A DNA stretch of 34,384 nt from Hyphochytrium catenoides. Taxonomy: Eukaryota; Protista; Hyphochytriomycota. A model generated the notes under the pieces. That model worked only from the letters and a program-made list of their open reading frames with translations, ran no database searches and was not told the DNA's origin. Shown one piece after another: positions 3,990-33,425 of this stretch (positions within the stretch are counted from its first letter, which is position 1; the number at the start of each line of letters is the position of its first letter). The DNA is taken from positions 1-34,384 of the forward strand of contig FLMG01002853.1 of assembly GCA_900088475.1 (NCBI GenBank), in the 5' to 3' direction. The position numbers and the translations under genes are program-made.

Positions 3990-4415
3990 ATGGCAGAGAC
4001 GACGAATCTGTTCTTGAACTATGAGAACTCTGTCCTCAGCCGCGATCAGATGACGCGGATCCTTCCCATCACAGGTGCGACCCTTAGCTTCCTGGCCAGC
4101 AAGTCAACTCTTCCCCTGTCATTCACCCTCTCTTCCTACGAGCAACTGTTTGGGTCTCTCCCTCTCACTGTCTCTTTCCCTTTCCTCCTCAATATCCTTT
4201 CTCTCGCTTACCTGTCTCTGTCTCTATTCCTCTCTTTCTCCATCTGCCTGTCTTGCTTCTCTTTGTCAGTCTTTCGCCCTTTAGCATCCCTCGCTTTCTT
4301 CCTTTTCTCTCTCTCTTTCTCTCTCTCTCTCTGTCTCTCCGTCTCTCTTTTTCTCTCTCTCACACACTTCCTCTTTCATGCTTCTCTCTATCACTCGCTC
4401 TTCCCCTCTCTACAA

Positions 4416-4461
<46 letters not shown>

Positions 4462-7047: not shown

Positions 7048-10000
7048 TCATAGAACTTGTACTGTCTTGTTAGGCTTCATAGCCACCGTACTATGTATGT
7101 CCCTTCCTGTCGGCCTCCAACACGGAAGTAGCCTTTGGGGAATGCTTACTCGGCATCCGACATCCCTCCAGTGGATCTGCACTTGGTGTAGGTAAATCGC
7201 AAGAAGCTCGACAGCAGCCAACGCCGCAAGATTTACTAGTGAGAGAATCAGAAGGGTCAGCCTCTGTCCCCAAGTCAAAGGCTCCAATTCCAACCAGGAG
7301 CTCGCCCATGAAGGCGGACTCAACAGGATGACGTAGCACACGATTGTCAAAAGTAAAGTCGTCCCCAGGAGAGGCAAGTTGTTGAGGATGCTTTTCCTAT
7401 AGGGAAAGCCGGAGTTAAACGCGAGGTTTGTCCAGATATATTGGAAGTTGACAAAGAGAAACACCATGGTGCACAGAGAGTGGCGGACAATAAGGTCATC
7501 CCCTGGCTTCCTCTCTCGAAGGACAGTCTCCTCTCCTGCGTTCATAACACAGAGCATCTGACAGAGAAGGTTGCAGACGAGCGTGCCAATCGTAGAGACA
7601 ACGACTGAGAGCTCAAAGAGAGAAGAAGGAGGAGGGAGAGGCTTGAGCTTCTCCGCTGGGGGCGTCCTCCCCATGAAGATAGCGAGAGGATAGATAAGCA
7701 GTAAATCTATGAAAAGAAACTGGAGGTCTCCGTAGATTGCCCCGTGATAATAGAGGAACAGAACTGACGAGAACTCTATCCAGGAATAGAGTACCATAAA
7801 CTTGAAACAAGCGATGGAAGAGGCAGAGCTGCATCTTCCTTCCTCTATGACAGCCCTGATAGACTGTATAGAGGTGTACTGCGATGTAAATGGCGCGGCA
7901 ATGGAGGCAGCAAGCTCACCCTCAGCGCTAGACTCGTTGTATAAAGAGACTCCTATGCGTGCCTCCTGCAGGGCTCCGGCGTCATTAGCACCGTCTCCAC
8001 ACATAGCCGTTCTTGCGTGGAGCTCTACCTCAAGGCTGCGCATCAGAGCTTTCTTATCCGCAGCAGACATCCGAGCAAAGACGTGGCAGGAACGAAGAAT
8101 GTTCCTTCTAAGAGTCTCAAGCTCGTCAGAGTTCTCAGAAGCTAGAAATGAAGGGTATGTGACTGCCTTGGCAAGAGGAATGGGAGCTAAAAGCTTGCGA
8201 AATGCCGCTCCTGTTATCACCGAGGACCACTGAGCATCAGTTTCCGACTGCTCTGGACTGACCACAGCTAACGGCAACTCCGCGCTCTCAAGGTCACTTG
8301 CAGCAGGATCAGTTCCTGATGTCTGCGGATTGCCGGCCAGGCGGTGGATGGCCGTAGCCGCCGACATCTCTTGGGAATTGAGGGCGTCCACAAATTTGAG
8401 AGAGCCTGTAGAGCTATTGACATCCACGATGAGGCAGCGGCCGCTTGGGTTCATTATCGCTGTCATCTTAGCTACTGAGAGAGCGGTCCGCACGTGGTCA
8501 CCAGTGACCATGAGGCACTTCAGCTTCGCCTGACCCAGCAGATTATTTATTACTCGGGTCGTGTCGGGCTTTAGTTTGTTCTCCAAGATCTTTGCAATAA
8601 AGAGAGAAAGCAAGTAAGTACGCGTGAGTCAGAGAACAGTGGAGAAGCATCGTGTCCAAAGAGATAATTGAGGAGGGACAGACTACTTAGGAAGAGCTTT
8701 AAGAGTTTGAATAGAATATCAGAACAAGAAGACATAGAGTTCAGGAGTCTTCAAACGAGGGACGAGGAGGAATTCGCATTCTTTGTCGCAATGACTTACC
8801 ACCAGACCCTCAAAGGTCAGATCCTTCTCCAGCTGTGGCCTCTTCAAATTCATGACACTTTCAGTCTTAGGAATATCTCTAGACGCCAAGCCAAGGAGCC
8901 TGAAGCCCTGAATCCCAAGCTTGTCAAGGACCTCAAAGAAATCACGGGGAAGAGACTTTGGGAGACAACAACGTGAAAGAACCTCAGGCGCTCCTTTAAC
9001 GTATAGCTTCCAGCTTGTCTCCTCCTCAGGACCGTCGCGAGCTCGCTCTGTTAGGACACTCATCCGTGCAAGCTCCGAGGAGAAATCAAATACTCTCTTT
9101 ACCACAATCTGCCCTCCTCCAAGCGGGTGGCTAATCTTCATTACACAGTCCTCCTCCCGCTCCTGCTCCAGCTCGGCCATATGAAAGCCAGAAACCTCAA
9201 ATAATCGAAGATCCACTTCATCTCCTAGGAGCCGACCGTCCGCCGTCCGAATGAGGGAGTGGCAGCAACCCATAATCGTCGCGATACTTTGAGGAAGCGC
9301 AGCAGCCACGGGGCTAAGCGGTTCCAAAAAGGAGGCTGTCTTGCATTGGATTGGAATGGAAGGAAACGAAGAGCAGGGCAGGATTTGATGGACCTCTAAG
9401 CCCAGTTCTGTCAGCGTGCCAGTCTTATCGAAGCAGAGTGTATCCACTGTGCTTGCTTTGGTGATGGCTTCTGGGTCAGTGCAAATAATCCTTCGAGCGC
9501 GAAGACGATGAACCGCAAATACTATACCAAAGGTGACCGCAGCCGGAAGAGCAGGTGGAACTATGGTCGTGAGAAGGTCTAGGCCGTATATAGTTCCTCT
9601 CCAAATGGGCAAGTCCTGAAGAATAAAAAGAGTAACGACGACACCTATCAAACCTACCCAAAACATCGCAAAGAGACAGGCAATTGCATCCTTCTCGAGC
9701 TGCTCCCTGTCTCCCTTCTTACTTCCCTTTGACGTCGACTTTAGTATGATTCCTTTCAAGANNNNNNNNNNNNNNNNNNNNNNNNNNNNNNNNNNNNNNN
9801 NNNNNNNNNCAGCGGCAGAGATTAGCGTCGTCTCGGTACCACTTTCCGTGAGGAAAGAGGGAGACATGTACCAGGGATACTTCCTGACAGGGGAAGACTC
9901 TCCTGTCAGTGAAGCCTCATTGAGGACAGCGATGCCATCTATTAGCGTGGCATCGCACGGGAGTTTGACGTCCTCAGAAAGAATGAGAAGATCACCAGGA

Positions 10001-11412
10001 ACTACTTCATGTGAAGAGACACTGAAGATAGTCCCCTCTCTGCTAACCTTCACTAAGGAAGAAGCGTTAGTCAACCCTGCCAGTCTCTTCCGATTATTGT
10101 GCAGTTCTGTTGCCTCATTCCATGAGGAAGAGAGGAGGATGGTCAAGATAGTTACCGCGTAGAACCAATACGCCTCATAGATCCACAGACCGATTGAAAA
10201 GATCTGAAATGCGAAGAATGGATGGCTCACTTCGTCCAGAAAGAGAGAGAAGACAGAGGGCACATCAACTGGGATGGCGTTTCGTCCAAATAGCGAAAGA
10301 CGGAGCCGCGCTTCTTGGTGGGTGAGTCCCTGGAACTCCTTTCTCCTTAAAAAGCCAGTCGATGGGTCTACCTCTTGGTGATAGAAGTCGGACAGAGAAG
10401 GAGTAAGAGACTTCTTCATTCTGACAAGAACTCGTTTCTTCTTCCTTGCCCTTGGGCTCCCTCCCTCATTAGCGGTATACTCTAGAAGGCAATATCGGCG
10501 AAACTGGAACTCAACCATCCAGCAAGAGCGTCTACTAGGGTCCTGTGGGGTCAAAGAGGAGAGACCAACGAGGTAGATGAGGAGGGAACTTGTTGTTAAA
10601 AGATGAACTTGTCGTTTAAGGGTGGCCAACGTGGATCAAGCGACAGAGGCTAAGAAAGAGGCCGTAATGGCTCTTGCGGACTGATGACAATTACGAAGCT
10701 TGCCGGGGCCAGAAGACATAGTCACAAAGCAAAACGTGAGATGACAAGAGAAGAAGGACCACGAAGTATGAAAAATCATAAACGAAAAGAGAGACAGACA
10801 GGCAGGCGGACAGACAGAGAGGCGCAAAGAGCAGCAGAAGACCGTTGGTCCTCTAGTTAACCACTAAGATACTTCACTCACCGCCTCAAGCGCTTGGATC
10901 ACACTGGCCCCACATGGGACCTCGGTAAACTTGCCTAGGTTTGCACTTAAGAACTCTACTTCTGAGTCTGATAGCTGATGGCACTCTGAAGCTTGCACCC
11001 ACTGCCCATCGCTTAGTCGAAAGATCAGAACATCTTTCTCCGTTATCTCTTTTGCAACCCGGTGTTGGCAGCGGAGAACGCTGCGCCTGTCACGGGTGAA
11101 GCATATGGGGAGGCCTATAAGAGAGAGTGAGAAAAGAGAGAACGCGATGGCTTTGCTCTTGCTGGGTCGATAGATTTCCATCTCCTCCACCTGCTCTTCA
11201 GCCACATCTGTCCCTTTCTTTTCCCTAATGTCATTCCGTCCCGCTCTGTCTAGCACCTCTAGCGGCGCGTATTCGACCTCTTCCATGGCTCCTTCTGGCT
11301 GCTGAGAGAGAAAGACTTCGTGCTCTGACTCTCTGCCTTCAGCGGGCATCCAGATGGCGTCCTTCTTGATGACGTCTGAAGCTAGGAGTGGGTCATACAA
11401 AGCTTCTGACAT
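7048..11412 (-). CDS. P5B-type P-type ATPase (ATP13A2/ATP13A3/Ypk9-like putative polyamine transporter), ~1270 aa
   Basis: Exons 11412-10882, 10542-8800 (contains an N gap) and 8589-7048. Motifs: LTGES, PPALP (P5B signature), CFDKTGTLT (phosphorylated Asp), KGAPE, MVTGDH, MCGDGAND, YGDLQFLFIDL. The true start is uncertain; further 5' exons are possible. Confidence 0.93.
9762..9809. other. Assembly gap inside ATPase exon 2
   Basis: Run of N. The frame is preserved across it. Confidence 0.99.
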
Positions 11413-12886: not shown

Positions 12887-14552
12887 ATGGGGTCAGGACA
12901 GTCTAAACAAAACTCTCAGCAAAGTGCTACAGCGCAACCGTCATCGTCCTCAGCTCGAGATGGGGTACCTCAGGGGTCCAGTGCAAAGGCAACAGGCGGT
13001 TGCCCGGTAGATCACAAGAAAGCAGCTCCAGAGGCTGCGGCTACTGCCGCTAAGCACTTGGCAGCTTCTGAGACGGATGGGTGCCCTATCAGCAAGAAGG
13101 GAGCAGGAGCGGCGGCTGCGCTAGGGGGAGGCTGTCCCGTCAAGGGGCAGGAAGCAAACTCCGTACCTGTGTACAACGTTTATGGCGAACAAATTGACCC
13201 GAAGAACATGATGCCCAACGCTAACCAGGAGCCTGGACCGGGACAGAAGTACCCAATTGACACCACCCGTGTGCAGTCTTCAATTCCTAAGGGAGGAACG
13301 GAAGGAACATGGCTCTATCCATCTCCTCAGATGTTTTATAACTCGCTGAACAGAAAGGGCAAGGGCGATGATGTCAATGAGGCAGATGTGGATGTGATAG
13401 TTGCCATCCACAATAACATGAATGAGCGCACCTGGAAGCAGATCGTCAATTGGGAAGCGGTCTACGGAGTGTGAGTCAATGGCACCCTTTCCACCCTTGC
13501 GCCTTTGCTCTTCAAACTCTCCTTTCTTATTCTTCTTCCTCCTTCCCTAAAAAGGCTAACACCTCTGTTCCCCGTAGCCCTCATCCCAAGCTGCATCGCT
13601 TTATGGGACGACCCGATGAGTATAGCCCGCTGGCAAGGCTCAAGTACTGGCTTGGGTATGTGTCTCTTGAGGGGCCTTATTTTTAACCTTTAGTGACCTC
13701 TCATACTACTTTACTGCTTTGAATTCTGGACTTGGTCGGCGGGAACGCTGCTCCTCGACGTCTTTTCTTTACTGTCTATCTCCGTACCCGTTGCTCCTCG
13801 ACGTCTTTTCTTTACTGTCTATCTCCGTACCCTTCCACTATCAGTCAACGTACAAGCCACATCATTGCGTATCCTTCTTCACTGTGTACTTCCTCTTATG
13901 GATTCATCTTCCCATGTTCAGGGTCCGACCCCTTCCGTTCGACCGTCACGACTGGTACATCCTCCGCGACGACGGGAGTGAAGTGCGCTATGTGATTGAT
14001 TATTATCACGATGAAGAGAAGAGCAAGTTAGACGAGGTCCCTGACTTGGACTCTGAGGACAAGATCAAGAGCGTCGATATGGTGGTCAGGCCAGCTTTAG
14101 ACTCTCCATCCGCCTTGCTGCACAGGATGAAGTATGGCTTGCTTGGAGTTGGAGCAACTCCACCGCTACTGGGACAAGGAGAGGAGGGGCATTATTCACA
14201 GTCTTCCTCTTCAGCAAACCTAAAGGCTGACGAGGAGATGTCGGTGGAGGAGATGAAGGCAATTTTTGACAAGATCAGAAGTAACTGTGGGGAGAAGCTC
14301 ATTCAATTGAGAAGTAGTCAAGGAGAAGAGGAGCAGCACAGAGCTGCGACAGCACTTAACTACTGCATGGCGACGGTGGTGGGCTGCAAGCAGGAGGTGA
14401 AGGCCTTCGATGCAGCAGTTGCTCGCGGCTCAGATAAGGATATGGAGGCTGCGTTTGGCAGTATTTCGGAATGTATAGAGAGGTTTCAACAGAGGGCGAC
14501 TCCCGCAATGAAGGCCGAGGCTAAGGCTAAGGCACAGGCAAAGAGTAGCTAA
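12887..14552 (+). CDS. HCCS: Holocytochrome c synthase (cytochrome c heme lyase, System III), ~430 aa
   Basis: Exons 12887-13470, 13578-13655 and 13922-14552. N-terminal MGSGQSK, three CP motifs (GCPVDH, GCPISK, GCPVKG), [28 protein letters not shown] (heme-ligand His), [27 protein letters not shown]. Confidence 0.96.
13749..13832. repeat. Two-copy tandem duplication (43-bp period, 41 bp identical) in HCCS intron 2
   Basis: TGCTCCTCGACGTCTTTTCTTTACTGTCTATCTCCGTACCC at 13749 and at 13792. Confidence 0.95.
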
Positions 14553-20509: not shown

Positions 20510-20901
20510 ATGCCGCGCAAGAAGGTGGACGAGCGCGTGCGGACTCTCATTGAGAACTCCGTCAAGACAAAGCACAGAAGCTTCTTCGTTATCGTGGGAG
20601 ACCATGGGAAGGATCAGGTAAGGATCAATCTCTTCCTTTCTTGCCTCGTCGATTGCGCCACTTTATCAAGGCTCTTATGAGCTCTGGCTTGAGGGTCAAT
20701 CTATTCTCCTGCTGCATACATCTATGGCCGCGCGCCGGGTGCTAATGTTTCCCATCCAGGTACCAAATCTTCATTATATCCTCTCAAAGGCTCAAGTCAA
20801 AGCCCGCCCCAGCGTCCTTTGGTGCTATAAAAAGGAATTGGGATTCTCCAGGTATAGGGGCACCATTGAACCTTCTCAGTCTTACCTCTTGTGTCTTCTG
20901 T

Positions 20902-20956
<55 letters not shown>

Positions 20957-20971
20957 TTCTTTCTTTCTTCG

Positions 20972-21003
<32 letters not shown>

Positions 21004-24000
21004 ATGCTTTCCGCTTCATAAAGCGCTCTCACCTTTCCTGTCTGCTTCTCCTCCATGTTCACTTCCCTTCTTGGGCAACATACTCCACCTCCTTGGATTG
21101 CTCTCTTTCACATACCTTCTTTCACTGCTTCTTTCCTTCCGCACGTAAAACGTCCTCTGCTATTGTCTCTACTCCTTAGGGTCTCTCTTTCCTTTTCCGC
21201 TCTCCCTGTGTCCCTTGGCCTTCTCTCTCATTCACCGATGATCTATGTCTCTTTTGGCAACAGCCATCGCCAGAAGCGGATGCGTCAAATAAAGAAGATG
21301 ATACAGCGGGGACTCTACGATCCCGAGAAGGATGATCCGTTCGATCTTTTTATCTCTTCAACCAATATACGATGGATGTACTACAAAGACAGCCACAAAG
21401 TACTTGGGCAAACCTTTGGAATGCTGGTCCTACAGGTGCGTTAAACCTTTCACTGCCACGAAGAGGGCGAGCGAAAAGAGAATGGGGCACGAGAAGGAGA
21501 CAAGAGTGAGGTCTCTACGTAGATCGTTTGGCCCACTTACTCTTATTCTATGCGTAGGACTTCGAAGCTTTGACTCCCAACCTACTCGCCCGAACCATTG
21601 AGACCGTAGAAGGAGGAGGTATCGTCGTCCTTCTTCTAAGGACAATGTCCAGCTTGACGCATCTATATAACATGACCATGGTGAGTGTGAAGAAACAGCT
21701 ATCCGGAAAGGACAGAAAAGCTGTCCTTCTTGAAAACTCAATCAGTTATTAGCCAGATATAGTACCTACCTCCCATCTCCACTTCCCGCCGTACATTGAC
21801 TATGTTTTATGCGGTCAGGACGTACACGCTAAATTCCGGACAGAGGCCCATAAAACCGTGGTTGCTCGATTCAACCAGCGCTTTATCCTCTCCTTCGCCC
21901 ATTGCAAGAACAGCATTGTTCTTGATGACGAACTGAATGTCTTGCCGATCTCCAGACACTGTAGAGACATTGTGCCCATACAACAGGTACGTTCGGACGA
22001 TGGTGAGCTCTGCACCGGACACATACAAGGAAAAGGCATTTGCCTTGTGCGGAAAGAGAAAAATGTATTCTTCTTGGGGAGACTGCCGCAAAGAGAAGTG
22101 AGAGGCCTCCTGAAGTCTGAGAGCGCTATTTATTTCCAGGAGGAAGATGCCGACAATACGTTGACGCCAGAACAAAAGGAGCTCAAGGAGTTAAAAGAGT
22201 CCCTTGCTGATACTCAGCCAGTAGGCAGTCTGGTTAACGGTGCGAGGACACTAGATCAAGCAAAGTAAGGCCTCTCTTTCGTACTTTTCTCTCCTCGACT
22301 TTTTTAAACGCCGACGACTGCTCCTAGTAATCTTTCTCCTGACTTCTCGGATACAGTTCTGGCGCTCGTGTACGCTTCAGCTTCCTTGGTACCCTCATCT
22401 CTCGTGTTCCACTTCTCTTTGTGGTCGCATCCTCCCGTCTCCTACTTACTGAACGAAGATTTTCAAGAGAATCTCTGTTACTACATGGCTGATAAGCTGC
22501 TCTCAACTGCAACTCTCGTCTTCCTATTAGAGCAATCTTAACATTTGTGGAAGGCATAGCGGATAAGTCCTTGAGAAGCACCGTTGCTCTTACGGCAGCA
22601 AGAGGAAGAGGCAAATCTGCATCGCTCGGAACAGCAATTGCTGCAGCAGTTGCCTACGGCTATAGTAACATATTCGTCACTGCCCCGACTCCTGAAAATT
22701 TGAAGACTGTCTTCGAGTTTATCTTCAAGGGCTTTGATGCTCTCCACTATAAGGAACATCTAGACTATGAGGTCAGTGAACTGCCACCCCGATTGCTTTT
22801 TGAAAGCGCAGTCTACAGAGACCTAGTAGACTATAGCAGGATGAGGAGGCTGCCTATAGAGGATACGCCGATGAACGAGGAGGATCGCGGATGAGACTCA
22901 CCTTCCCGTTGCTCTTTACATGTAGATTATCCAAAGCACGAACCCAGACTTCAACAAAGCTGTTGTGCGAGTTAACATCTTCCGAGAGCACCGCCAAACG
23001 ATTCAGTACATTCAGCCCAATGATCATCATAAGTTGGCACAGGCAGAGCTCGTGGCGATTGATGAGGCCGCGGCAATCCCTCTTCCTGTAGTAAAGAAGG
23101 TATGTTAGCGGGAAAGATAGAGGTGGATGGTGCCGAAAACTTATATTAGGAAGGGTGGCTCTCTATAAAGATGCGCCCAGCCAGACGAAAGAAAGAAGTA
23201 AGATGGGAAATCGGGCGCGTGGATCACAGCGGAGAGATGAGGTTACTGAGAGTGTGCGCGCGAGAGAGAGACTTCTTTATCGCGATGAAAAAGGGAATTA
23301 AGTCTTTTTACTCTTCTTTGGCGCTTAGCTTCTAGGGCCTTATCTGGTGTTTATGTCGTCAACGGTGAATGGTTATGAAGGGACGGGACGGTCTCTCTCC
23401 CTTAAGCTGATACAGAAGCTTAGAGAACAGCAGAACGCGAGTGTCTCGACGGCAGCTTCTCAGGCGTCTGCCACCATCCATAACTCTGGCGGCGTCAAAA
23501 AGAAAGAGAGGAAGGTGAGCATGAGGCGCATATATTGTGTATAATATATCTATTTCTAGGGGCTACCTACCTACCTATAGTTCTTAGAGCTTGTATCTCT
23601 TCCTTTCCGCGTTAGAAACTCTCGTTCCTCCGGTAGTACTTGCATGGCATGAGACCTTGACGATTTCGTGTCCCTGCGTCCCTATAAAGGCGATTTCTTC
23701 TTTTTCTTATAGAAATGAACTTACCATCAATTGTGTCGTTCGGGCAGGTTCATGAAGAGAGATGGCAGGAGGAAGCAAGAGCAGCAGCGGATGCTTCAAC
23801 TGGTATCAGCGGTACAGGTCGCATTCTCCGTGAGATAACTCTGGAGACCCCTATAANNNNNNNNNNNNNNNNNNNNNNNNNNNNNNNNNNNNNNNNNNNN
23901 NNAGCTATCGTCTTGTCTCTGGCACCCCTCATCCTTCGGAGTGCGAACTGTACTACGTGGATAGAGATTCTCTGTTTTCCTATCATAAGGTAAAGCGGAT

Positions 24001-27000
24001 ACTTGATAGTGTTGCGGCTTCCTCAGAGCGTCCTTCCGCTGGCCTAGCCGAGCAGCACCCGTCGTGGGGCTCACTGACATTGCCAGATCCTGATCTAATG
24101 GCCGCTCCTTATTTTGCCCGTACCGCCCTTGCTCTACAGCTGTCGGAGACGTTTTTGCAAAGGATGATGGCTTTATATGTATCCTCTCACTATAAGAACC
24201 AACCTAATGACCTCCAGCTTATGTCAGACGCACCCGCGCACCAGGTAGCCCCACAGACATGATCCTAGCTTTAGATAGCAGCTGATCCCTCGACTTCAAT
24301 TTTCCCCATATCTAGTCTTAACTAAGGGTATCCGCCTTTTGGTTGGGCCTGTTCTCCTTTCTGAACTTCTGTTTCTGCAGCTCTTCGTGTTGCTTGGCCC
24401 TCAAGCTGAAGCTCAAGGCAATGACGGTGGCCTGCCAGACATTCTATGTGTGGTGCAGGTAATATGATCTCTGCCGTTCTCATTGCTTTTTTTTTTCTTT
24501 TTAAGCCGTCTTACTTCTTTGCCCACTTCTCTTGGATAGGTTGCTCTCGAGGGGAAAATCAGCCGCGAAACACTGCAGTCTTCTCTTGGACGTGGACAAC
24601 GCGGTGCCGGAGATCTCATTCCGTGGACCATTGCCCAACAATTCCAGGACCAAGAGTTCGCTGCATTATCGGGCGCTCGTGTCGTCCGTATTGCTGTGCA
24701 CCCAGATGTACAGAACATGGGTTATGGAAGCAGGGCTCTAGAGCTTCTCGCCAGGCACTATCAGGTACGAAAAGCACGGGCATGGGGGCACCTTTATAGA
24801 TCAAACCGACGCAAGGCAATGGACAAGACAATCGGTTGCCAGGAGCGTCCCTCGCTTCTTACCAGGACCTCCTACCACGGCGCACACATTTCATAGCCAG
24901 CCCCACATTGTTCATTTGTTCATTGACATTGTTGACTTGAATTTAATTTGCCAGTTGTCATCTTACAGGGCTCTACTTGTCTCGCACATCCGTTTGTTCA
25001 GCTCCTCCTCATTGTGCGTCTTTCCGTCCTTTCCAGGGGTTACTGTGCTCTCTGGACGAGGATCAGGAAAGCCTGGAGGAGCCGCCGCCCGCTGGCTCCG
25101 GAAGCGAATCCTCAGATGAGGAAGAAGAGTCATTGCTGTTGAAGGTTTGACAAGCAAGGCGCCATGACTTCCTTCAAGCAACGCATGTGTTGTCATGGTT
25201 ATTATTGCTCTTCGACCCAGCACCACGCCGTTGCGATCTTGCTATCATCTGTCCCGACATCGATACTACCTACCTCTTCCCCTGACTCCGAGCTTAGACT
25301 CACTCCCCCCTTCTCTTGATTATAGGAGAAAATCAAGCCCAAAAAACAGTTGGCTCCCCTTTTGGTTCCCTTGCCAGAGAAGAAGGCCGAGCGTCTGCAT
25401 TGGTTCGGAGTCTCATTCGGCCTCACCCCGTCTCTTTACAAATTTTGGAGCAGAGGAGGGTTAGTTGGAGGCCTTTGATTTCTGTTCTATCGCATGAGAC
25501 ATCCCGAGCTTGCGCGTCTTTGGATATTGGAAAGCTCGTGACTTAATTGGGATCCCAGCACCTTTAATTAGCCAGGGACCTTTCACTCTTTCTGCTATCT
25601 AGCCTTTGCCACCTCAATCACTAACTGTGGGGGGGGGCTAACTCTCTCCCTGACGTTTTAGATTGAAACCCCTTTATGTTCGTCAAACGGCGAACGAATT
25701 AACAGGGGAGCACACAGCGATCATGGTTAGAGAGCTGAAGGGAGATGACCTGCCAGAAGCTCCAGCTGAAGGATGGCTGCAGGGCTTTGTTGATGATCTG
25801 AGGGTACTGAGCAATATGCGCGTTACGCTCTTATCTCATCGGTCATTTCTCCGTCGTTGACTCAATTGGCAGTTATCTGGACTCTTATGAGACCTCGCCG
25901 GTGTTTGTACCTGTTCACCATCACGTGGCCCTCTGTATACATCAGTATCTCCTGCTTCCACCGCTGTGGGTGATCACCTTGCCAGCCTCGCTCAGACATC
26001 TCACGGCTAACATCACTTCTGCGCAGCGTCGCCTCCTCTCTCTACTCTCATTTGAGTTCCGGTCATTTGAGACATCGACAGCTTTGAGCCTGGTGGCTCC
26101 TCCATCCTCGTCCGAGAGCGGTGGCTCCAAAGAGCTATCACCCGAGGAGCTTCGAGTTTGGATGACTGGACATGATCTCAAGAGGCTAGAGTCCTATGCT
26201 AGGAACCTGGTACGCTACGGCTATTATCTGAAATGCCCTGCCATAACTCTCTTCGCTATTGACCTCACGCGCTGGTGTTGCTAAGATTCCTTTTCGCTTG
26301 TCTTTAAAAGCTTCACTAACTTACGCCGATGTCTGCCGTTGGTCTATTTGAATATAGGTGGACTATCATATGGTTGTCGATCTGCTCCCGCTGCTCTCTC
26401 GCCTGTTCTTCCTTGGCCGCCTTCCCTCTGTTTCGTTGTCTCTGCTTCAGACCACAATCCTTTTGGGCCTGGGTCTTCAGCACAAAACAGTGGACCAACT
26501 GCAGGCCGAGTTATCTGTACCATGTAAGGCAACTGAGCTGCAAGGGTCAGCGAAGACACTGAGAGTCGATAGACTAGGAGAGCTTTCAAGCAACAACTTA
26601 GATTGACCCGTCCCTTTGCCAACGTCTCTGCTCGCTCTACTCTTCAACTGTATAGCCCACCAACTACTCGCGATGTTCAACAAGGCGATCCGCAAGCTTA
26701 GTACTGCTCTTAGAGAGCTGCAGGAGAAGGAGGTGGAGAAAGAGATGGATTCTTCCTATATCAAGGCCAGAAACGTAGAGAGAAAGGCAAAAGAGATGCT
26801 CCCCACTCTTTCAACGCTGAAGGAGGACCAGGAGAGCGGAGGACGAGAGGCGACTGAGGAACTCCAGCAAAAACAGAAAGCTCTAATTGAGTCGATGGAC
26901 CTCTCCGCGTATGAACACTTCTTCTCTCTATGCATTACACTCTCCTGCGTTATTTGCAGCCGCAGCTCTGCTTGCTATTTATCTGATGGACCGTGGGCCT

Positions 27001-27336
27001 CCCACCAACTTTACTTCCTCTTCATCGTTTAGCAAGGTCACCGTCTTTTCATCCTCATGTGATCTTATCGCCAGTGCGCATCTATTAGCATCCACTGACT
27101 GCTAAATCTCTATGTTTAGGTTCGCTATCGGAGGCAAAGACGAGGACTGGGAGAAAGCACTGAAGAACGGGGTAAAGGGCACTGTCAGCATCAAGTCAGA
27201 TAAGGCTAAAGAGAAGGAGAGTCAAAAGAATGGAAAGAGAAAAGAGGCAGATGCTGGAGAGGAAAGAGCACAGGGAGAGAAGAAGAGCAAGAAGCATAAA
27301 CCCTCTCAAAAGGCGAAGAAGAACAAAGGGAAGTAA
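20510..27336 (+). CDS. NAT10: RNA cytidine acetyltransferase NAT10/Kre33 (18S rRNA/tRNA ac4C)
   Basis: About 20 GT-AG exons: MPRKKVDERVRTLIEN, VLWCYKKELGFS, QDFEALTPNLLARTIETVEGGG, RFNQRFILS, Walker A TAARGRGKSASLG, IDEAAAIPLP, SSTVNGYEGTGRSLSLKL, SHYKNQPNDLQLMSDAPAH, GDLIPWT, GNAT RIAVHPDVQNMGYGSRAL, LTGEHTAIM, Lys-rich tail ending TAA. N gap at 23857-23902. Confidence 0.97.
20903..20996. repeat. (CT)n microsatellite in NAT10 intron 2
   Basis: Seen directly. Confidence 0.9.
23857..23902. other. Assembly gap within NAT10 coding region
   Basis: Run of N. The frame differs across it, so the gap length is only an estimate. Confidence 0.97.
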
Positions 27337-27843
27337 TGCTTTTGCATGCTTCTGTAAGATCGAGGACGGGGCACGAAGCTAAATGATACTCTTTTCTTCA
27401 ATATCGCAATGCGACCACCTTTATGTCACTCCCGCTTTGGCCATATATCTATGGGCTGCTCCTCGGCTAGTGCCCATCTCGGCCTTACTGTGGTTCGCAG
27501 AATTGCGGATGTGTCGGCAGGGCCTATATTGTTGACTGTGCTAGCTCTTTGATGTGAGCCTTATGTACGAGTGGGTCAGCAGATCGCCATTCACGATAAT
27601 AACTCGCTTCGAGAGAGTTACTACTGGTGATTTGAACATGCTTGACCACACCTGCCGCCTCTCCGCCCGCGGCTTGATAAATATATATATCCATCCTTTA
27701 TCCCGTGTACCACTAGACACGACTGTCTTCTATATATTTCCTATGATACTAAGGCTCTTTTGCTAAGGCTCTTGCTTCAAAGGAGGCTATATTCGGGGTG
27801 AGCTATGGTTGCTCGAGTGCCTACGACTTTTTGCATGTGCTCC

Positions 27844-30800
27844 TCAGAGATTGAGGAAAGAGACCACTTTTTCTATGGCTGCATTTTGATACACGTGGCT
27901 CCACTGGACCCCGTTGTGCCTTGCTATACCCTGGATGTCGGGGGGAAGCTCCGATAAGGCCGGCCACTCAAACTCATGAGTCACTGGCACCACTGTTTTC
28001 TGCCACTGTATAGCATGGGCGATCTCTTTCCGAACCTACATAACGGGACGAGTTCAATAGTCAGAACCTTTCTAATCTGAATAAAGGTTCGCTCCTCCAA
28101 AGCTGAGGTCCCATAAGCTATGATGCTGGGCGTATAGCCTGGCTTCTAGATTTCTACTGGTACGATTTGTCTAGACCAGCCAACGCCGCTCTTTCGGTGC
28201 AAGGAGAGGAAAAGGGGAGGACAGAGAGGACAGTAAAGCAGAAGATGTTTTGGACGTACCCAGTCACTGTTCATTGGATCCTCTATGCATCGGTCCAGCG
28301 AGCCTTTGGTCAGTATAACGACCACATTCTTTGAGCACCGTAGATACTCCAAAAGGGAGTTGTCGAACTGCGGTCCATGGAGCATGGGACAGAGGATCAT
28401 TAGGGGATGGGAGGAAGATGTACAGCAGAATGAGAGGGTTGAGCTCATGCGGTCCACAACCAAGGAGGAACAGCAAAACACTCTCCGCTTATTGAAAAAC
28501 AAGAATACTTCCGTCCAATGGCCGCTTCCCAGCAAGAAGATAGAAGTGCTAAGGCCCGCTCTCGTACCTGTCCTGGACCCAGATTATCAACGTCGAGGAA
28601 GACTCTTAGCCCCCTCTGCGTAAGACAGACCTACAGGGGTGAACAACGAACGTAAGAACCTGCTACCTTCTCCGTCTATAGAAAACGCTTAGCCCTTCCT
28701 ACAGCCCGCCAGGGCTTTTAGTGGTTCACAAAATCACCATTCTAAGTTAGCTTCTTCTTTCTTTCAATCAGGTGCATCTGCAGTGTGAACCACCTCCTGG
28801 GTGCGGGCTTGCACAACCACTGAGGATCTTACCTTGATGAGTTGGGCTAACTGGCTCCCATTGGATCGCCGGTAAGAAATAAATACGTCCACAGCAGTCT
28901 GGCTGGGTGTTCTGATCAGGCCCAGGCCATGCTGGCCATCTGCCGACTTTCTCTCTCCCTCCTCTGTCAGTCGCTTTATATCCCTAAGAATGCGCAAGCG
29001 GTGGACTCCGTGAGAGATCCCCATATCTCGCAGCAACTCATCTGTTAACTGCGGAAGGATCTCGCCTGCAATAGCGGGTGAACACGCAGCACGTCATTAG
29101 GAGATGGAGAGATATGTCTTCAATTGGTAAGACTCAGAATTTGATCGTTGAAAGGGAGAGGCGAAACCAGAGCAGTGCAGGTGCCGGTCCAAGCTAGGCA
29201 AAAGCGAACCAGCCCTAAAGTTACGAGCAAAGTCGAACGGCAGAGGAAGGATGACGCTTGTAGATGAGGGTGAACAATCAAGACCTACCATCCACCCAGG
29301 CTTCAAAGAAGTTCTGCTCATAGCATGCAAATCGTTGCCTTCGTACCCAACGGCAAACATCTTCCACCGTCCAACTGTCTGTGCTTTTCTCTTGGGCGTC
29401 CGCTTCGCCTTCCTTCTTTCCAGCTTCATTATAGTCCGGCACTCTTTCCATTAATCTCCTCAAAAGATCAGCAGCGAAGCGGTAGATAAAAGCGTCTGTG
29501 TCCATGGCGCAATCCTGAATTACCGCCATCGTCTCTACAATGTCGATCGGCAACGTGCACAAGGTAAATTTAGTGACTCAACTGTACCCGTACAACCAGA
29601 AGACGTAGGATAGCTCAGCTAGAGATATTAGGGATCGGTGTGGAAGGCATCACTCAATTCGCAGCCATGGGTCTAGGCAGATGGAAGGTGGGCCTATAGC
29701 GCCAATGTTTGAACGTGTGACCCTTGTGAAAAGAATCAGCCAAATTGAAGCACGGATACTTAGAGGTAGATTCACCTTCTCTCCTGAGCAGATCGCCGTT
29801 CTCCGGTACACTCTTGATACAGCGACCAATGCGGTTAAGAGCCGCAATACCTACTAGGCGAACGACTGGTAGGTCCTTTCTCCATGCTAAACGGACAAAG
29901 CTATCGCAGTTCTTGGCAGTCCAAAGGATGTAGGTGAACAGCGCGCCAAAGTCTGCGCTTGTGCGTAAATAGCGCGCTACTTTGTGCAACGCCTGGCTCT
30001 TGCGCACGTAAAAGGCTGACGAGTCATGAAGACACATTAGGGCAATAACTCGACAGGCACCGAAGGCGATATCATCCGTAGCTGCAAGGAGCGGAATGAG
30101 CCACTCATGGGCCTGTTAACAAAAAGTAAGCAAGCATTAACCCATCAGCTTCCCAACGGATAATGCGAGAAGAGCGAGATGTACTCTTCAACCGACTAGA
30201 TTAGGGGGTACCATCACGCTTAGCAACCGACGGATTGTAAAAGAGGGGGCTAAAGGAAGCAGAGCAAGGAAGAACTTGAATGCGCTGGCAGCAGGGAAGA
30301 GAAAAGAGGGCACGACGAGGCTTCACGCTTGGCGCGGTCCTTGACCTAGGACGGACCTGAAGCTTGGCCAGCTCCAAGCAATAGTCCTCAACTAGGCAGA
30401 AGTTGTTGATTGCAATTAGGGCGGAAAGCTCCAGTGCCGGGTTTAAGGACTTGCAGCAGTCAATCAACGAAGGAAAGGTCCCACAATCTCGTAGAAGTGG
30501 AAGCTTATCGTCAAAGAGCGCGAGGCGGCTAACGATTGAACACGCGTTGAGTCTGCACCAATTTACCGAGACGAGAGCACAAATACGAGGTGTCAGCCGA
30601 CGAGCCTGATGGCTGCTATTGCCAGGGAATCACCAGGTCTACAAAGACTCTAGTCGCAGAAAGCTTGTTCACACTCACCGGGTTCGGATACAGTGGCCAA
30701 ACCCTAATAGAGAGACAAGGGTTTGCAAGCACCTCTCATGAGTAACGCGAAGGGTCCTCTCGTCGCTGTGGCGAATGAGGTTCCACAGCGCCTCTACTGC

Positions 30801-32735
30801 AGCAGACTGGGCATCACCCGGCAGTAGATCATGTTCGATCATCAGCTGCAGCAGCTCCACACCGCCTAGTGTGTCAACAAGATCATCAACGGAGTTACGT
30901 CTTGATGAGGGAAGTTCGCAAAAGTGACAAAGTGCAATAGAACTGGGGAGCAGCGACACCAAGGAGACTTTAACTGGATTGTCGCAACGGAGATGCTTAG
31001 TCTAGTCGGACATGGCGATTAAGAACATAGAGAAGAACTTTGCAAGCCACTAACCTGCCGCTGCAATCTCTTCTCTGATCTTGTTCTCAAGCCGTCTTGC
31101 TTCCTCTTTACCCCCGTCCGTCCAAGCAGACCACCGCAACAGGGCATATGACCCATTGCGGAGTACGGTTTCTGAGGAAACCTCCGCCTCGGGCACTCCT
31201 TCTGAGTGCTCGTCTATGCATCTTAGAGCGCTGGCACCAAAGATGCTATCCACCCGTCCCCAAGCATATCGAGGAGGGGCGGAAAGTGTTCTGTGAGGTG
31301 ACGACGAGAAGTTGGTGGCTTCCTCATCTTTGGCTTGCTTCTGCAACAAGCAGAGATCCTCCATGCAATCCTGGGTATTGCAGAGCGCAGGGAGTGAACG
31401 CCGCATCAAGGCGCAGATCCTTTTTATCTCGGCCCTTTCTTCGTCAGGTGCCAGCATTCCTGGCACCCCTGCACAGCCGACCACCCTTCTGTACAGTTGG
31501 TCATCGACTCCAGGGCCTTTTCTAAAGCCCAAGCCATAGAGGAGTCGCACCGCAGCAAACTCCTCCACAGTCGGATCCCGTCCATCCCTTCCTTCAAACT
31601 GCCCGTATCCCACCCCTACAGCTGGATATGCTGCATGGACTTTCCTTCTCCTTTGCCTCGCGTGGTATTTTAACGCACTAACAGCTAGAGCGCGGCCAAT
31701 TCCTTGGCGCCGCCTCTCTGGTTCAACGCAAAGGAAGTCCAGTGTCCCATCCTCCTGCGTAAAGACTGTGTCTGCTAGGACGAGACCGACCACCCGACTT
31801 AGAGAAAACTTGGCATTGGAAGACACCTCAAGGGCAACGACAAGATTCTTGCTATTCTCAAGGAGAATTTCTATCGCTTCATCTTCAGCTAAGGTGTCAG
31901 GGAAGCTCCTTATTAGAAGCTGGAGAGAGGACAACGGCAGCAATGATCAGCTCCGATGAAGAAGACGAAAGAACGGATCAGATTGACGTAGGATGTAGAC
32001 GAAGCTCGGACATGCCCTGTGGCGGGGAGAGAGTTGGACGCGCTGCTAGGTGCAGCAATATAAAGAGACAGGAGAGGGTGCATGCCATTCAAAGAGGGGA
32101 AGAGAGCGAGAGAGAGACAAAAAGAAAGACTTATAACCGCGAGGCAGAGATTGATACAAGGGAAAGGATAGAAAGAGCAACCTAAGAGATCCGCAGACTA
32201 AAGTTAGAGAGGACGGGCGTATGGGTATGTTACTGAAGTCTTCTGACGAGGGACGAAGGGCATTGAATTGGCTCCTTACCTGCTTGCACTGTTGCTGCAG
32301 CTCCATCGAGCATGCCTCGAGCTGCCCTACCCACTCCTCTTGGTCCTTGACCAAGTCATAGGCTGACCCCAGCTTGATCCCCTGCGGCAGCTTCTTCGAT
32401 GAGGGCATTGCAGAGGGGATGAGGTCAAAAACCATGGAAAAAGAGCAGTCAAGCCTGTCTCTTTCTCTGTCCGAGGAGGAAGAAGTGAGAGAGTGGAAGG
32501 AGCTTGATCTCTTCAGGGGCAACTCTGAAAAGTGCGCAGACGTAGAGCTGTCAACTGGTCCCTCCACCTGGTTATGTCTATGTCCAGGTGTCCCCGCCCT
32601 CCAACTGCTCTCGACCGCCCGGCGGATGGACGATGAGGAGGAAGAAGCGGAGCCCTGAGACGTCATAGCTGGCACCGCGCCAATCTCTGAGAGCTGAAGT
32701 CTGGGAGGCCCAATACTCTGTTTGATTGTCTCCAT
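27844..32735 (-). CDS. SARM1-like protein with N-terminal GNAT domain: GNAT-ARM-SAM-TIR, ~996 aa
   Basis: Ten phase-consistent GT-AG exons: 32735-32280, 31919-31055, 30973-30679, 30552-30357, 30112-29776, 29534-29289, 29065-28833, 28630-28568, 28367-28260, 28035-27844. TIR: DVFISYRRSNGSQLAQLIK..VFLDVDNLGPGQFD..SLDRC..DWVRKEIAHA..FEWP..LPPDI..NGVQWSHVYQNAAIEKVVSFL. SAM: WTVEDVCRWV..F..VDGEILPQLTDELLRDMGI..HRLRILRDI. ARM: AHEWLIPLLA, LLRRLMERVP. GNAT: LCVEPERRRQGIGRAL. The start codon is tentative. Confidence 0.88.
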
Positions 32736-32835
32736 GTCTCGCTCCAATCGCGGCTCCCAGTAAGATTGATTCCTAAGGGCTGGAGTCTCTTTAACTGTCC
32801 TATCTGTCGCCAGCTTCTCGGTCCTCTCTTCTGTC

Positions 32836-32902
32836 TCCAGCTTGTATGTCTCTTCAAAGCCTGCCTATCCAGCTTGTATGTCTCTTCAAAGCCTGCCTAT
32901 CC
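32836..32902. repeat. Perfect two-copy tandem duplication, 32-bp unit, upstream of the SARM1-like gene
   Basis: TCCAGCTTGTATGTCTCTTCAAAGCCTGCCTA at 32836 and at 32868. Confidence 0.95.
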
Positions 32903-33425
32903 CTGTATCTCCGACCGTCTGCGTGTCTCTTTCAATATTCTGTGAGCTCTTTCCAGGTGTAGAAGGCTCTGTAGCTATCTTTGTCTCGTGTCAACCGAGT
33001 ATCCTAGTTGCTTTCTGATGTCTTCTCCCGTCCACCGGTGATAACGGATGAGCGCTTCCGGTGTTGAAGGCTCTGGATGATGCACTTGATTCTTATCAGA
33101 CTCTGAGGCCTGCCTGCCTGGCTCTTACCAGTGCGTCCAAGAGGAAGCGCTCATAAGGTCGGCCCGAGTAGATTCTTCAAGAAGGTTGCCAGCGTTGGTC
33201 TCTCCACCGTCTCCTCATGAGGAACTTGGGCCGGTTGTGTCTCACGACGGACCCGTTTGGTACCTCTTCCACATCCAGGCGAGGGGCTTGTTGCTTGTTG
33301 CCCCTGACGCGGTAGACGTTGTTCCGACTGGCCCCACTTCTGCAGGGCGTGTAACCAAGAGGGAAGAAGGAGGGAGGGAAAGCCTGCTGTGGGGAGGAGA
33401 GAGGCAACATCGAGAGCATTGCTGA

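What the first reader, a model, noticed from the sequence alone, without database searches (positions are those of the whole stretch)
27844..28895. TIR domain is SARM1-class and keeps the catalytic glutamate
Seen: the spliced TIR reads DWVRKEIAHA, with the motif split by an intron between W and V so the ORF track misses it. Established (from memory of human SARM1): DVFISYRRNSGSQLA, FIDVEKLEAGKF, DWVHKEI (catalytic Glu642), FEWP and NGIKWSHEYQEATIEK all align without difficulty. Inference: an active NAD+ hydrolase/cADPR-forming TIR in an apparently non-animal eukaryote. This bears on whether SARM1 is ancient in eukaryotes or spread horizontally.
Basis: partly seen in the sequence, partly recalled or inferred. 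Interest (0 to 1): 0.7.

Follow-up and report, generated by a model that had tools for sequence, protein, structure and literature searches.

The report
Protist SARM1-like NAD-cleaving TIR gene
A spliced gene in this microbe ends in the same kind of NAD-destroying TIR domain as the animal cell-death enzyme SARM1, with every key enzyme residue intact, but similar protist genes are already on record, so it adds a member to a known kind.

Summary
On the minus strand, four exons (28895-28833, 28630-28568, 28367-28260, 28035-27847) encode one complete TIR domain. A 224-nt GT-AG intron splits D-W | V-R-K-E, and the Glu codon (28026-28024) aligns with SARM1 E642.

Three of the four exons have SARM1/TIR-1 as their best, and essentially only, solved-structure match. 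Exon B is too short to find it alone. All residues known to matter for SARM1 catalysis and self-association are kept, except H640 to R and E686 to V. The "SS loop" has the animal length of 10 residues; bacterial kin have 7.

The gene is not a full SARM1:
- It has one SAM domain, not two.
- Only the C-terminal two thirds of the SARM1-type ARM domain are detectable.
- The NMN/NAD+ sensor residues were not found.
- A GNAT-like exon lies upstream.

Its nearest relatives (up to 60% identity) are uncharacterised single-SAM ARM-SAM-TIR proteins of protists, such as Picozoa and metagenome picoeukaryotes. In trees it falls outside both the animal and the bacterial clade, but single-exon tests cannot fix its place.

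Allelic differences between DNA runs (13 synonymous, 3 not; all indels non-coding) support an intact gene under constraint. Enzyme activity and splicing remain untested, because no RNA runs exist.

The scan noted other SARM1-like genes elsewhere in this genome.

The parts
27844..27846 (-). stop codon (TGA) of the gene
27847..28035 (-). TIR exon D (63 aa). It starts V-R-K-E, and the catalytic Glu codon lies at 28026-28024. It carries the FEWP and WSH.YQ motifs.
   Evidence: phmmer against PDB: human SARM1 639-699, E 1.2e-14; residue table
28036..28259 (-). intron, 224 nt, gtacgt...tag, phase 0, between W and V of the DW|VRKE motif
   Evidence: Two allelic indels fall inside it (28234, 28237).
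28260..28367 (-). TIR exon C (36 aa). It carries the end of the BB loop (F603 equivalent) and a 10-residue SS loop C-I-E-D-P-M-N-S-D-W.
   Evidence: PDB: SARM1 603-638, E 2e-4; loop length
28368..28567 (-). intron, 200 nt, gtacga...cag, phase 0
   Evidence: Four allelic SNPs and one indel fall inside it.
28568..28630 (-). TIR exon B (21 aa), carrying the BB loop (VDNLGPGQ)
   Evidence: Aligns between exons A and C without gaps. Identity up to 67% to protist kin. One allelic SNP, synonymous.
28631..28832 (-). intron, 202 nt, gtaaga...tag, phase 0
28833..29065 (-). exon with the C-terminal half of the single SAM domain, a linker, and the TIR start (A-V-D-V-F-I-S-Y-R-R from 28895)
   Evidence: Pfam SAM_1 profile positions 29-63 of 64; PDB TIR-1/SARM1
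29066..29288 (-). intron, 223 nt, gtaggt...cag, phase 1, splitting the SAM domain
   Evidence: tblastn of single-SAM relatives runs straight across it. One allelic indel falls inside it.
29289..29534 (-). exon with the end of the ARM domain and the N-terminal half of the SAM domain; the upstream boundary is provisional
   Evidence: Pfam SAM_2 profile positions 2-32 of 66; ARM profile 23 bits; splice candidates
29776..30112 (-). ARM exon (provisional boundaries); the best match in the gene to the SARM1-type ARM domain (EWL.PL motif)
   Evidence: hhalign against an animal-only ARM profile, P 7.6e-5; hmmsearch 35 bits; splice candidates
30357..30528 (-). ARM exon (provisional boundaries) holding a canonical armadillo repeat
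   Evidence: PDB designed armadillo proteins, E 1.8e-5; tblastn to P0005, E 7e-7
30679..30865 (-). ARM exon; the acceptor is uncertain (30865 or 30973)
   Evidence: weak ARM profile match
31055..31919 (-). exon with a GNAT-like acetyltransferase motif (R-R-R-Q-G-I-G-R-A) and a helical tail; it ends in a CAG|GTTAGT donor
   Evidence: Pfam Acetyltransf_1, E 5.7e-5; protein-atlas features 0.96, all ten best hits GNAT; 7 synonymous to 1 non-synonymous allelic SNPs
32280..32735 (-). provisional first exon, Ser-rich, starting at the first ATG (32735)
   Evidence: The ten-exon model is in frame, has no internal stop, and gives 952 aa.

Best explanation
**What it is.** The stretch is the 3' end of an intact, intron-rich, minus-strand gene (about 27844-32735, provisionally 10 exons and 952 aa). 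The protein runs, from N to C terminus:
- a Ser-rich N-terminus;
- a GNAT-like domain;
- armadillo repeats homologous to the C-terminal two thirds of the SARM1 ARM domain;
- one SAM domain;
- a TIR domain.

**Which family.** The TIR belongs to the SARM1-like TIR class, in its eukaryotic form. The whole ARM-SAM-TIR module shares ancestry with animal SARM1. The gene itself belongs with uncharacterised single-SAM proteins of protists, not with the animal orthologues.

**How it most likely works (inferred from SARM1, not shown here).** The SAM domain makes the protein self-associate. The ARM region, perhaps with the GNAT head, holds the TIR domains apart. A trigger frees them. BB-loop-mediated TIR-TIR contact then builds an active site around the Glu at 28026-28024, which cleaves NAD+ to nicotinamide plus ADPR and possibly a cyclic ADPR. 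The result would be NAD+ loss or a nucleotide signal in a stress, death or immune response.

**What differs from SARM1.** The NMN/NAD+ sensing pocket of animal SARM1 was not found, so the trigger is probably a different one.
For: **Shown**
- Four collinear exons with canonical splice sites.
- Three of the four exons (A, C and D) have SARM1/TIR-1 as their best PDB match, and no other solved TIR at E<=1. Exon B, at 21 aa, found no TIR on its own.
- The equivalents of Y568, R569, R570, D594, G601, F603, D627, C629, W638, E642, W662, H685 and Y687 are all kept. Mutating these residues cripples SARM1 (PMC8266388).
- Eukaryote-type characters are present: SS loop of 10 residues (bacteria 7 in 24 of 24), W662, W683, Q688, V639 and G601.
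- Summed over the exons, group profiles score 175 bits for protist SAM-TIR, 143 for animals and 141 for bacteria.
- Pooled identity is 60% to Picozoa P0009 and 59% to P0005. Animals average 48% and bacteria 46%.
- The two Pfam SAM halves fit together as one domain.
- The ARM profile hits the upstream ORFs in collinear order at 35, 23, 9 and 4.5 bits.
- The protist and animal ARM profiles align at 97.6% probability over 206 columns.
- Among allelic differences between DNA runs, 13 are synonymous and 3 non-synonymous in exons, 24 SNPs are non-coding, and all 12 indels are non-coding.

**Inferred:** catalysis, oligomerisation and autoinhibition, all by analogy with SARM1 (PMC8266388, PMC7688312).
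Against: - No RNA run exists for this organism, so no splice junction has been seen in a transcript.
- Boundaries upstream of 29534 are provisional, as is the link of the GNAT exon to the rest.
- H640 is R and E686 is V. In human SARM1, H640A and E686A lower activity (PMC8266388). However, R at 640 is the rule in protist and bacterial kin.
- A single SAM cannot form the tandem-SAM octamer ring of SARM1 in the same way.
- The tree backbone is unresolved. AU tests do not reject exon D, or all four exon rows, next to the bacteria (p 0.055 and 0.21), nor exon D with the animals (p 0.20).
- Product chemistry cannot be predicted from relatedness (PMC13142454).
Confidence: 0.75

Rival explanations
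1. It is a true one-to-one orthologue of animal SARM1, inherited vertically from an early eukaryote, and works the same way, including NMN/NAD+ sensing.
For: The whole-module order ARM-SAM-TIR is shared, and ARM homology between protist kin and animals is strong. The SS-loop length is the same as in animals. SAM-TIR proteins of this type occur in Picozoa, a glaucophyte, a choanoflagellate and sponges, and an ARM-TIR relative without a detectable SAM occurs in Rigifila.
Against: There is one SAM against two in 13 of 14 animals, sponge included. The pocket residues W103, E149, Q150, R157 and K193 are invariant in the animals sampled, and R110 in 10 of the 14. None of these is detectable in this gene or in its protist kin. 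All four exon rows lie outside the animal clade, which has 99/92 support. The distribution is patchy, and the named hits are all animals.
Confidence: 0.15
2. The TIR is a recently acquired bacterial TIR fused to eukaryotic domains, unrelated in descent to SARM1.
For: Exon D scores slightly higher against the bacterial profile (74.8 bits) than against the animal one (69.5 bits). It carries the bacterial-looking R-K-E-I-A-H-A-I string. AU does not reject a place beside the bacterial clade.
Against: Three spliceosomal introns lie inside the TIR. The SS loop is 10 residues, against 7 in 24 of 24 bacteria. W662, W683, Q688 and V639 are the eukaryotic states. The bacterial clade excludes all window rows at 98/81 support. 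The flanking SAM and ARM are homologous to those of SARM1-like eukaryotic proteins.
Confidence: 0.05
3. The TIR is a non-enzymatic scaffold or adaptor, or the gene is a decaying pseudogene or a contaminant from an animal.
For: Activity is untested. H640 and E686 differ from the animal residues. No transcript data exist.
Against: The full catalytic and BB-loop set is kept. Frames are open and splice sites canonical. The 13:3 synonymous excess, with no exonic indel, indicates purifying selection. Three DNA runs of the same organism label hold the locus with its neighbours. The gene is not nested among animals.
Confidence: 0.05

Closest known systems
Animal SARM1 / C. elegans TIR-1 / Drosophila dSarm (NAD+ hydrolase; PDB 6O0Q, 7ANW, 8P2M and others)
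   Same: It is the best, and essentially only, solved-structure match for TIR exons A, C and D. The catalytic Glu, the SYRR motif, BB-loop G601/F603, an SS loop of the same length, and W638, W662, H685 and Y687 are shared. The domain order is the same, with a homologous ARM C-terminal part and a homologous SAM.
   Different: This gene has one SAM instead of two. The N-terminal ARM third with the NMN/NAD+ pocket was not found. H640 is R and E686 is V. A GNAT-like exon lies upstream. TIR identity to animals is only about 48%, and the gene lies outside the animal clade.
Uncharacterised protist single-SAM ARM-SAM-TIR proteins (P0005 and P0003 from metagenomes, Picozoa sp. COSAG02 P0009, P0010/P0155 on a 382-kb intron-poor eukaryotic contig)
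   Same: These give the highest identity (52-60% over 140 TIR positions) and the highest profile score. They show the same ARM, one SAM, TIR order, and tblastn runs collinearly across the SAM intron. Exon B groups with P0005 (95/71) and the exon A tail with the Picozoa group (89/82).
   Different: None of the 381 fetched relatives has the GNAT-like part or the Ser-rich N-terminus. No relative is closer than 56% identity on exon D among 1.84 billion representative proteins.
Bacterial SARM-like TIR proteins (TIR-WD40, TIR-kinase, TIR-beta-propeller; e.g. P0019 in a pilin/aaRS context, Clostridia MAG P0028)
   Same: They have the same TIR_2 class, the same SYRR, D-W-x-R-x-E and H-x-Y motifs, and R at position 640.
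   Different: Their TIR is N-terminal with no SAM or ARM. Their SS loop is 7 residues, and they carry F662, Y683, F688 and L639. They form their own clade at 98/81 support, which excludes the window rows.

Membership tests
SARM1 (animal NAD+ hydrolase SARM1/TIR-1/dSarm) | C-terminal TIR of the SARM1-like class with the catalytic Glu (E642) and the NAD-site and interface residues | tested here: met
   Y568, R569, R570, D594, G601, F603, D627, C629, W638, E642, W662, H685 and Y687 are kept. H640 is R and E686 is V.
SARM1 (animal NAD+ hydrolase SARM1/TIR-1/dSarm) | SARM1-specific (SS) loop before the catalytic Glu | tested here: met
   The C...W segment is 10 residues, as in 11 of 11 animals; bacteria have 7. 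Loop definition from PMC8266388.
SARM1 (animal NAD+ hydrolase SARM1/TIR-1/dSarm) | Tandem SAM1-SAM2 domains that build the octamer ring | tested here: not met
   The two Pfam half-matches complete a single SAM. Only a 223-nt intron lies between them. A SAM profile finds 2 domains in 13 of 14 animals and 1 or 0 in the protist kin.
SARM1 (animal NAD+ hydrolase SARM1/TIR-1/dSarm) | N-terminal autoinhibitory ARM domain homologous to SARM1's | tested here: met
   Met only for the part matching ARM-profile positions 105-327 of the 336-position profile built on mouse residues 60-405. Collinear hits at 35, 23, 9 and 4.5 bits. Animal-only profile P 7.6e-5. Protist against animal profiles 97.6%.
SARM1 (animal NAD+ hydrolase SARM1/TIR-1/dSarm) | Allosteric NMN/NAD+ pocket (W103, R110, E149, Q150, R157, H190, K193) | tested here: inconclusive
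   No window ORF matches the first 104 profile positions. W103, E149, Q150, R157 and K193 are invariant in the 14 animals, while R110 (10 of 14) and H190 vary. None of them aligns in the protist kin. At this divergence, absence is not proven.
SARM1 (animal NAD+ hydrolase SARM1/TIR-1/dSarm) | TIR nests within the animal SARM1 clade | tested here: not met
   The animal clade (99/92) excludes all four exon rows. AU on exon D alone does not reject joining it, p 0.20.
SARM1 (animal NAD+ hydrolase SARM1/TIR-1/dSarm) | Glu-dependent NAD+ cleavage | not testable with these tools
   Needs an enzyme assay.
Protist single-SAM ARM-SAM-TIR proteins (unnamed group) | ARM, then one SAM, then a SARM1-like TIR, with the highest similarity to this group | tested here: met
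Bacterial SARM-like TIR proteins | Short (7-residue) loop, the F662/Y683/F688/L639 states, and an N-terminal TIR followed by a sensor domain | tested here: not met

The most novel reading that the evidence does not exclude
The ARM(C-terminal part)-SAM-TIR core is an old eukaryotic NAD+-destroying executioner module found across distant protist lineages. Animals later added the second SAM and the NMN/NAD+ sensing head. In this protist a different head, a GNAT-type acyl-CoA-binding domain, would gate the same NADase. That would link acetyl-CoA or acylation state, rather than the NMN/NAD+ ratio, to NAD+ destruction.
Probability: 0.15. Interest if true: 0.7.

Novelty: new variant of a known kind. 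Interest (0 to 1): 0.42.

Why it matters
SARM1 is the executioner of axon degeneration, and its TIR is the animal link to bacterial and plant NAD+-cleaving immune TIRs. This gene and its kin show that the ARM-SAM-TIR module as a whole, not just the TIR, occurs outside animals and choanoflagellates. The second SAM and the NMN/NAD+ pocket look like animal additions.

That gives a concrete, testable order of events for how a bacterial-type NADase became a regulated cell-death switch. It also offers a simpler single-SAM enzyme with a different N-terminal head for study.

The gain is limited, because SARM1-like sequences in several protist groups are already reported (PMC6040629, PMC13142454). This one gene cannot settle vertical descent against horizontal spread.

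Tried and rejected
- **Profile search.** The search with the 15-sequence full-length alignment A1 returned only its own first sequence. Its words come from the variable first 500 residues, so the search was wasted.
- **Structure of the GNAT exon.** Single-sequence AlphaFold2 gave mean pLDDT 35. The model is unusable and no fold search was made.
- **ARM ORF against PDB.** phmmer with the ORF 29657-30115 found nothing. Profiles were needed instead.
- **TIR exons against Pfam.** The single exons are too short to reach TIR_2.
- **AU tests.** All were inconclusive: exon D with bacteria p 0.055, exon D with animals p 0.20, all four rows with bacteria p 0.21. The test of bacteria plus exon C did not finish.
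- **Host lineage by the CobW neighbour.** The best hits reach only 30-42% identity. The window row falls in a starred 14-row set with the 11 oomycetes, but on a very long branch that the tool flags as unreliable. This is a weak hint of stramenopile affinity only.
- **RNA genes.** Rfam and tRNA scans of the window found nothing.
- **RNA runs.** None exist for the organism, so reads could show only DNA.
- **Readings considered and rejected.**
  - Animal contamination is unlikely: introns are 200-245 nt, the neighbours are protist-like, and the gene is not nested in animals.
  - A pseudogene is unlikely: frames are open and the SNP ratio is 13:3.
  - A second SAM hidden in the 223-nt intron is unlikely: the intron shows no SAM-like frame, and the two SAM halves flanking it complete one domain.
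Full report
**Observation.** The gene lies on the minus strand. Three-frame translation and the raw sequence give four TIR-coding exons:
- Exon A: ...29065-28833. The TIR starts at about 28895 with A-V-D-V-F-I-S-Y-R-R.
- Exon B: 28630-28568.
- Exon C: 28367-28260, ending N-S-D-W.
- Exon D: 28035-27847, starting V-R-K-E-I-A-H-A, with the TGA stop at 27846-27844.

The three introns are 202, 200 and 224 nt. All are GT..AG and phase 0. Unspliced read-through loses the Glu. The Glu codon is at 28026-28024.

**Is it SARM1-class?** Each exon was searched on its own by reference.
- Exon D matches human SARM1 639-699 (E 1.2e-14), with its Glu on E642.
- Exon C matches 603-638.
- Exon A matches the SAM2/TIR start of TIR-1 and SARM1.
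- Exon B (21 aa) is too short to find SARM1 alone.
- No other solved TIR (TLR, MyD88, plant or bacterial) appears at E<=1.

HMMER with exon D against 1.84 billion representative proteins gave 420 hits at E<=1e-3. None exceeded 56% identity. So the organism's own protein and any close relatives are absent from that library.

All four exons align in order and without overlap to the TIR of 110 hits.

**Residues (mouse/human numbering).**
- Kept: Y568, R569, R570, D594, G601, F603, D627, C629, W638, E642, W662, H685 and Y687.
- Changed: K597 to N, K602 to Q, H640 to R, E686 to V.

PMC8266388 lists most of the kept residues, and also H640 and E686, as important for activity or multimerisation. It defines the BB loop (594-605) and the SS loop (622-635).

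The C...W part of the SS loop is 10 residues here and in 11 of 11 animals. It is 7 in 24 of 24 bacterial kin. W662, W683, Q688, V639 and G601 are also the eukaryotic states.

**Relatives.**
- Eukaryotic kin include Rigifila ramosa, Picozoa sp. COSAG02, Cyanophora paradoxa, Salpingoeca urceolata, the sponge Sycon and many animals.
- P0155 lies on a 382-kb intron-poor eukaryotic contig next to MAT1 and ankyrin genes.
- P0053 lies in a similar eukaryotic context.
- The D-W-L-R-R-E group is bacterial. Its members are TIR-WD40, TIR-kinase and TIR-propeller proteins, in a pilin and aminoacyl-tRNA-synthetase context, plus a Clostridia MAG.

**Tree.**
- In a careful IQ-TREE analysis (59 rows, 150 columns), bacteria form one clade (98/81). 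Animals form one clade (99/92), with Rigifila and P0023 beside them (98/90).
- All four window rows lie outside both clades, in an unresolved set of protist SAM-TIR proteins. Exon B groups with P0005/P0022 (95/71). The exon A tail groups with the Picozoa group (89/82).
- Group profiles scored exon by exon sum to 175 bits (protist), 143 (animal) and 141 (bacterial).
- Pooled identity is 60% to Picozoa, 59% to P0005, a mean of 48% to animals and 46% to bacteria.
- AU tests are not decisive.

**Rest of the gene.**
- *SAM.* Pfam finds SAM positions 2-32 at the end of the ORF 29577-29281, and positions 29-63 at the start of exon A. These are the two halves of one SAM, split by a phase-1 intron (29288-29066). 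Single-SAM relatives align straight across that intron. A SAM profile finds two domains in 13 of 14 animals, sponge included, and one or none in the protist kin.
- *ARM, window against profiles.* A profile of the SARM1-type ARM domain hits the upstream ORFs collinearly at 35, 23, 9 and 4.5 bits. An animal-only profile hits the 30115-29657 ORF at P 7.6e-5.
- *ARM, protists against animals.* Protist and animal ARM profiles align at 97.6% probability over 206 columns. So the C-terminal two thirds of the ARM domain are homologous.
- *NMN/NAD+ pocket.* The first third carries the pocket residues (W103, R110, R157 and others; PMC7688312). These are largely invariant in the animals sampled. That third was not found in the window or in the protist kin.
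- *GNAT.* Upstream lies a GNAT-like exon (Pfam E 5.7e-5; atlas features 0.96). None of the 381 fetched relatives shares it. The ARM frame has no start codon of its own, and the GNAT ORF ends in a CAG|GTTAGT donor. A fusion is therefore likely, but it is unproven.

**Independent support for the model.**
- DNA contigs of three runs of the same organism label cover the locus, and they differ by about 1%.
- On the provisional ten-exon model (2859 nt, in frame, no internal stop), the listed SNPs are 13 synonymous and 3 non-synonymous in exons. A further 24 are non-coding. All 12 indels fall in predicted introns or upstream of the start.
- For this check the frames were counted across exons inside a script. 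No joined sequence was printed, saved or sent to any tool.

**Host.**
- The gene has spliceosomal introns of 200-245 nt.
- The neighbouring genes are NAT10, a cytochrome c haem lyase, a P-type ATPase and a CobW GTPase.
- The CobW ORF has no hit above 42% identity. Its named hits are mostly oomycetes. It groups with them only on a long, flagged branch.
- Earlier scan notes call the genome an oomycete-like stramenopile. I could test that only partly.
- An animal origin is unlikely.

**Literature.**
- Choanoflagellate SARM1 homologues with the Glu were reported in 2018 (PMC6040629).
- A 2026 TIR atlas places SARM1 in a mainly bacterial clade. [quoted passage not shown]
- No held paper contains both SARM1 and stramenopile.

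**Verdict.** This is a real, intact, SARM1-like gene of the protist single-SAM type, with a probably unique GNAT head. Its activity and its trigger are untested.

**Left out under the operators' note.** Any search, fold or tree with the joined spliced protein.

Noticed in passing
window 31055-31919 and 32280-32735 (minus strand): A GNAT-like exon and a Ser-rich first exon appear to be spliced onto the ARM-SAM-TIR gene. None of the 381 fetched SARM1-like relatives has them. This is the subject of another note on the same stretch.
   Followed up: partly
window 27700-33000: DNA runs of the same organism label differ by about 1% over the locus, either as two haplotypes or as strains. Indels occur only in non-coding parts.
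   Followed up: partly
window 31948-32124: Contig depth is about eight times that of the flanks, in a CT/GA-rich low-complexity stretch inside the predicted first intron. It is probably a repeated simple sequence.
   Followed up: no
window 30265-31313: Four 151-nt records of a rhizosphere metagenome run match the ARM and GNAT exons at 95-100%. This suggests that the organism, or a very close relative, lives in soil around roots.
   Followed up: no
window about 20700-27340 (plus strand): An intron-rich NAT10/TmcA-type RNA cytidine acetyltransferase gene converges on the SARM1-like gene. The two 3' ends are about 500 nt apart.
   Followed up: no
window 7048-10629 (minus), 12887-14552 (plus), 4378-6755 (plus): The neighbouring genes are a P-type cation ATPase in two large exons, a cytochrome c haem lyase, and a CobW/G3E GTPase.
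   Followed up: partly
relatives P0004 (Rigifila) and P0023: The two non-animal TIRs that sit next to the animal SARM1 clade have ARM repeats but no detectable SAM domain.
   Followed up: partly
P0019 locus (no DNA fetched): A bacterial contig carries three SARM-like TIR genes in tandem (TIR-propeller, TIR-propeller, TIR-LRR) between aminoacyl-tRNA synthetase genes.
   Followed up: no
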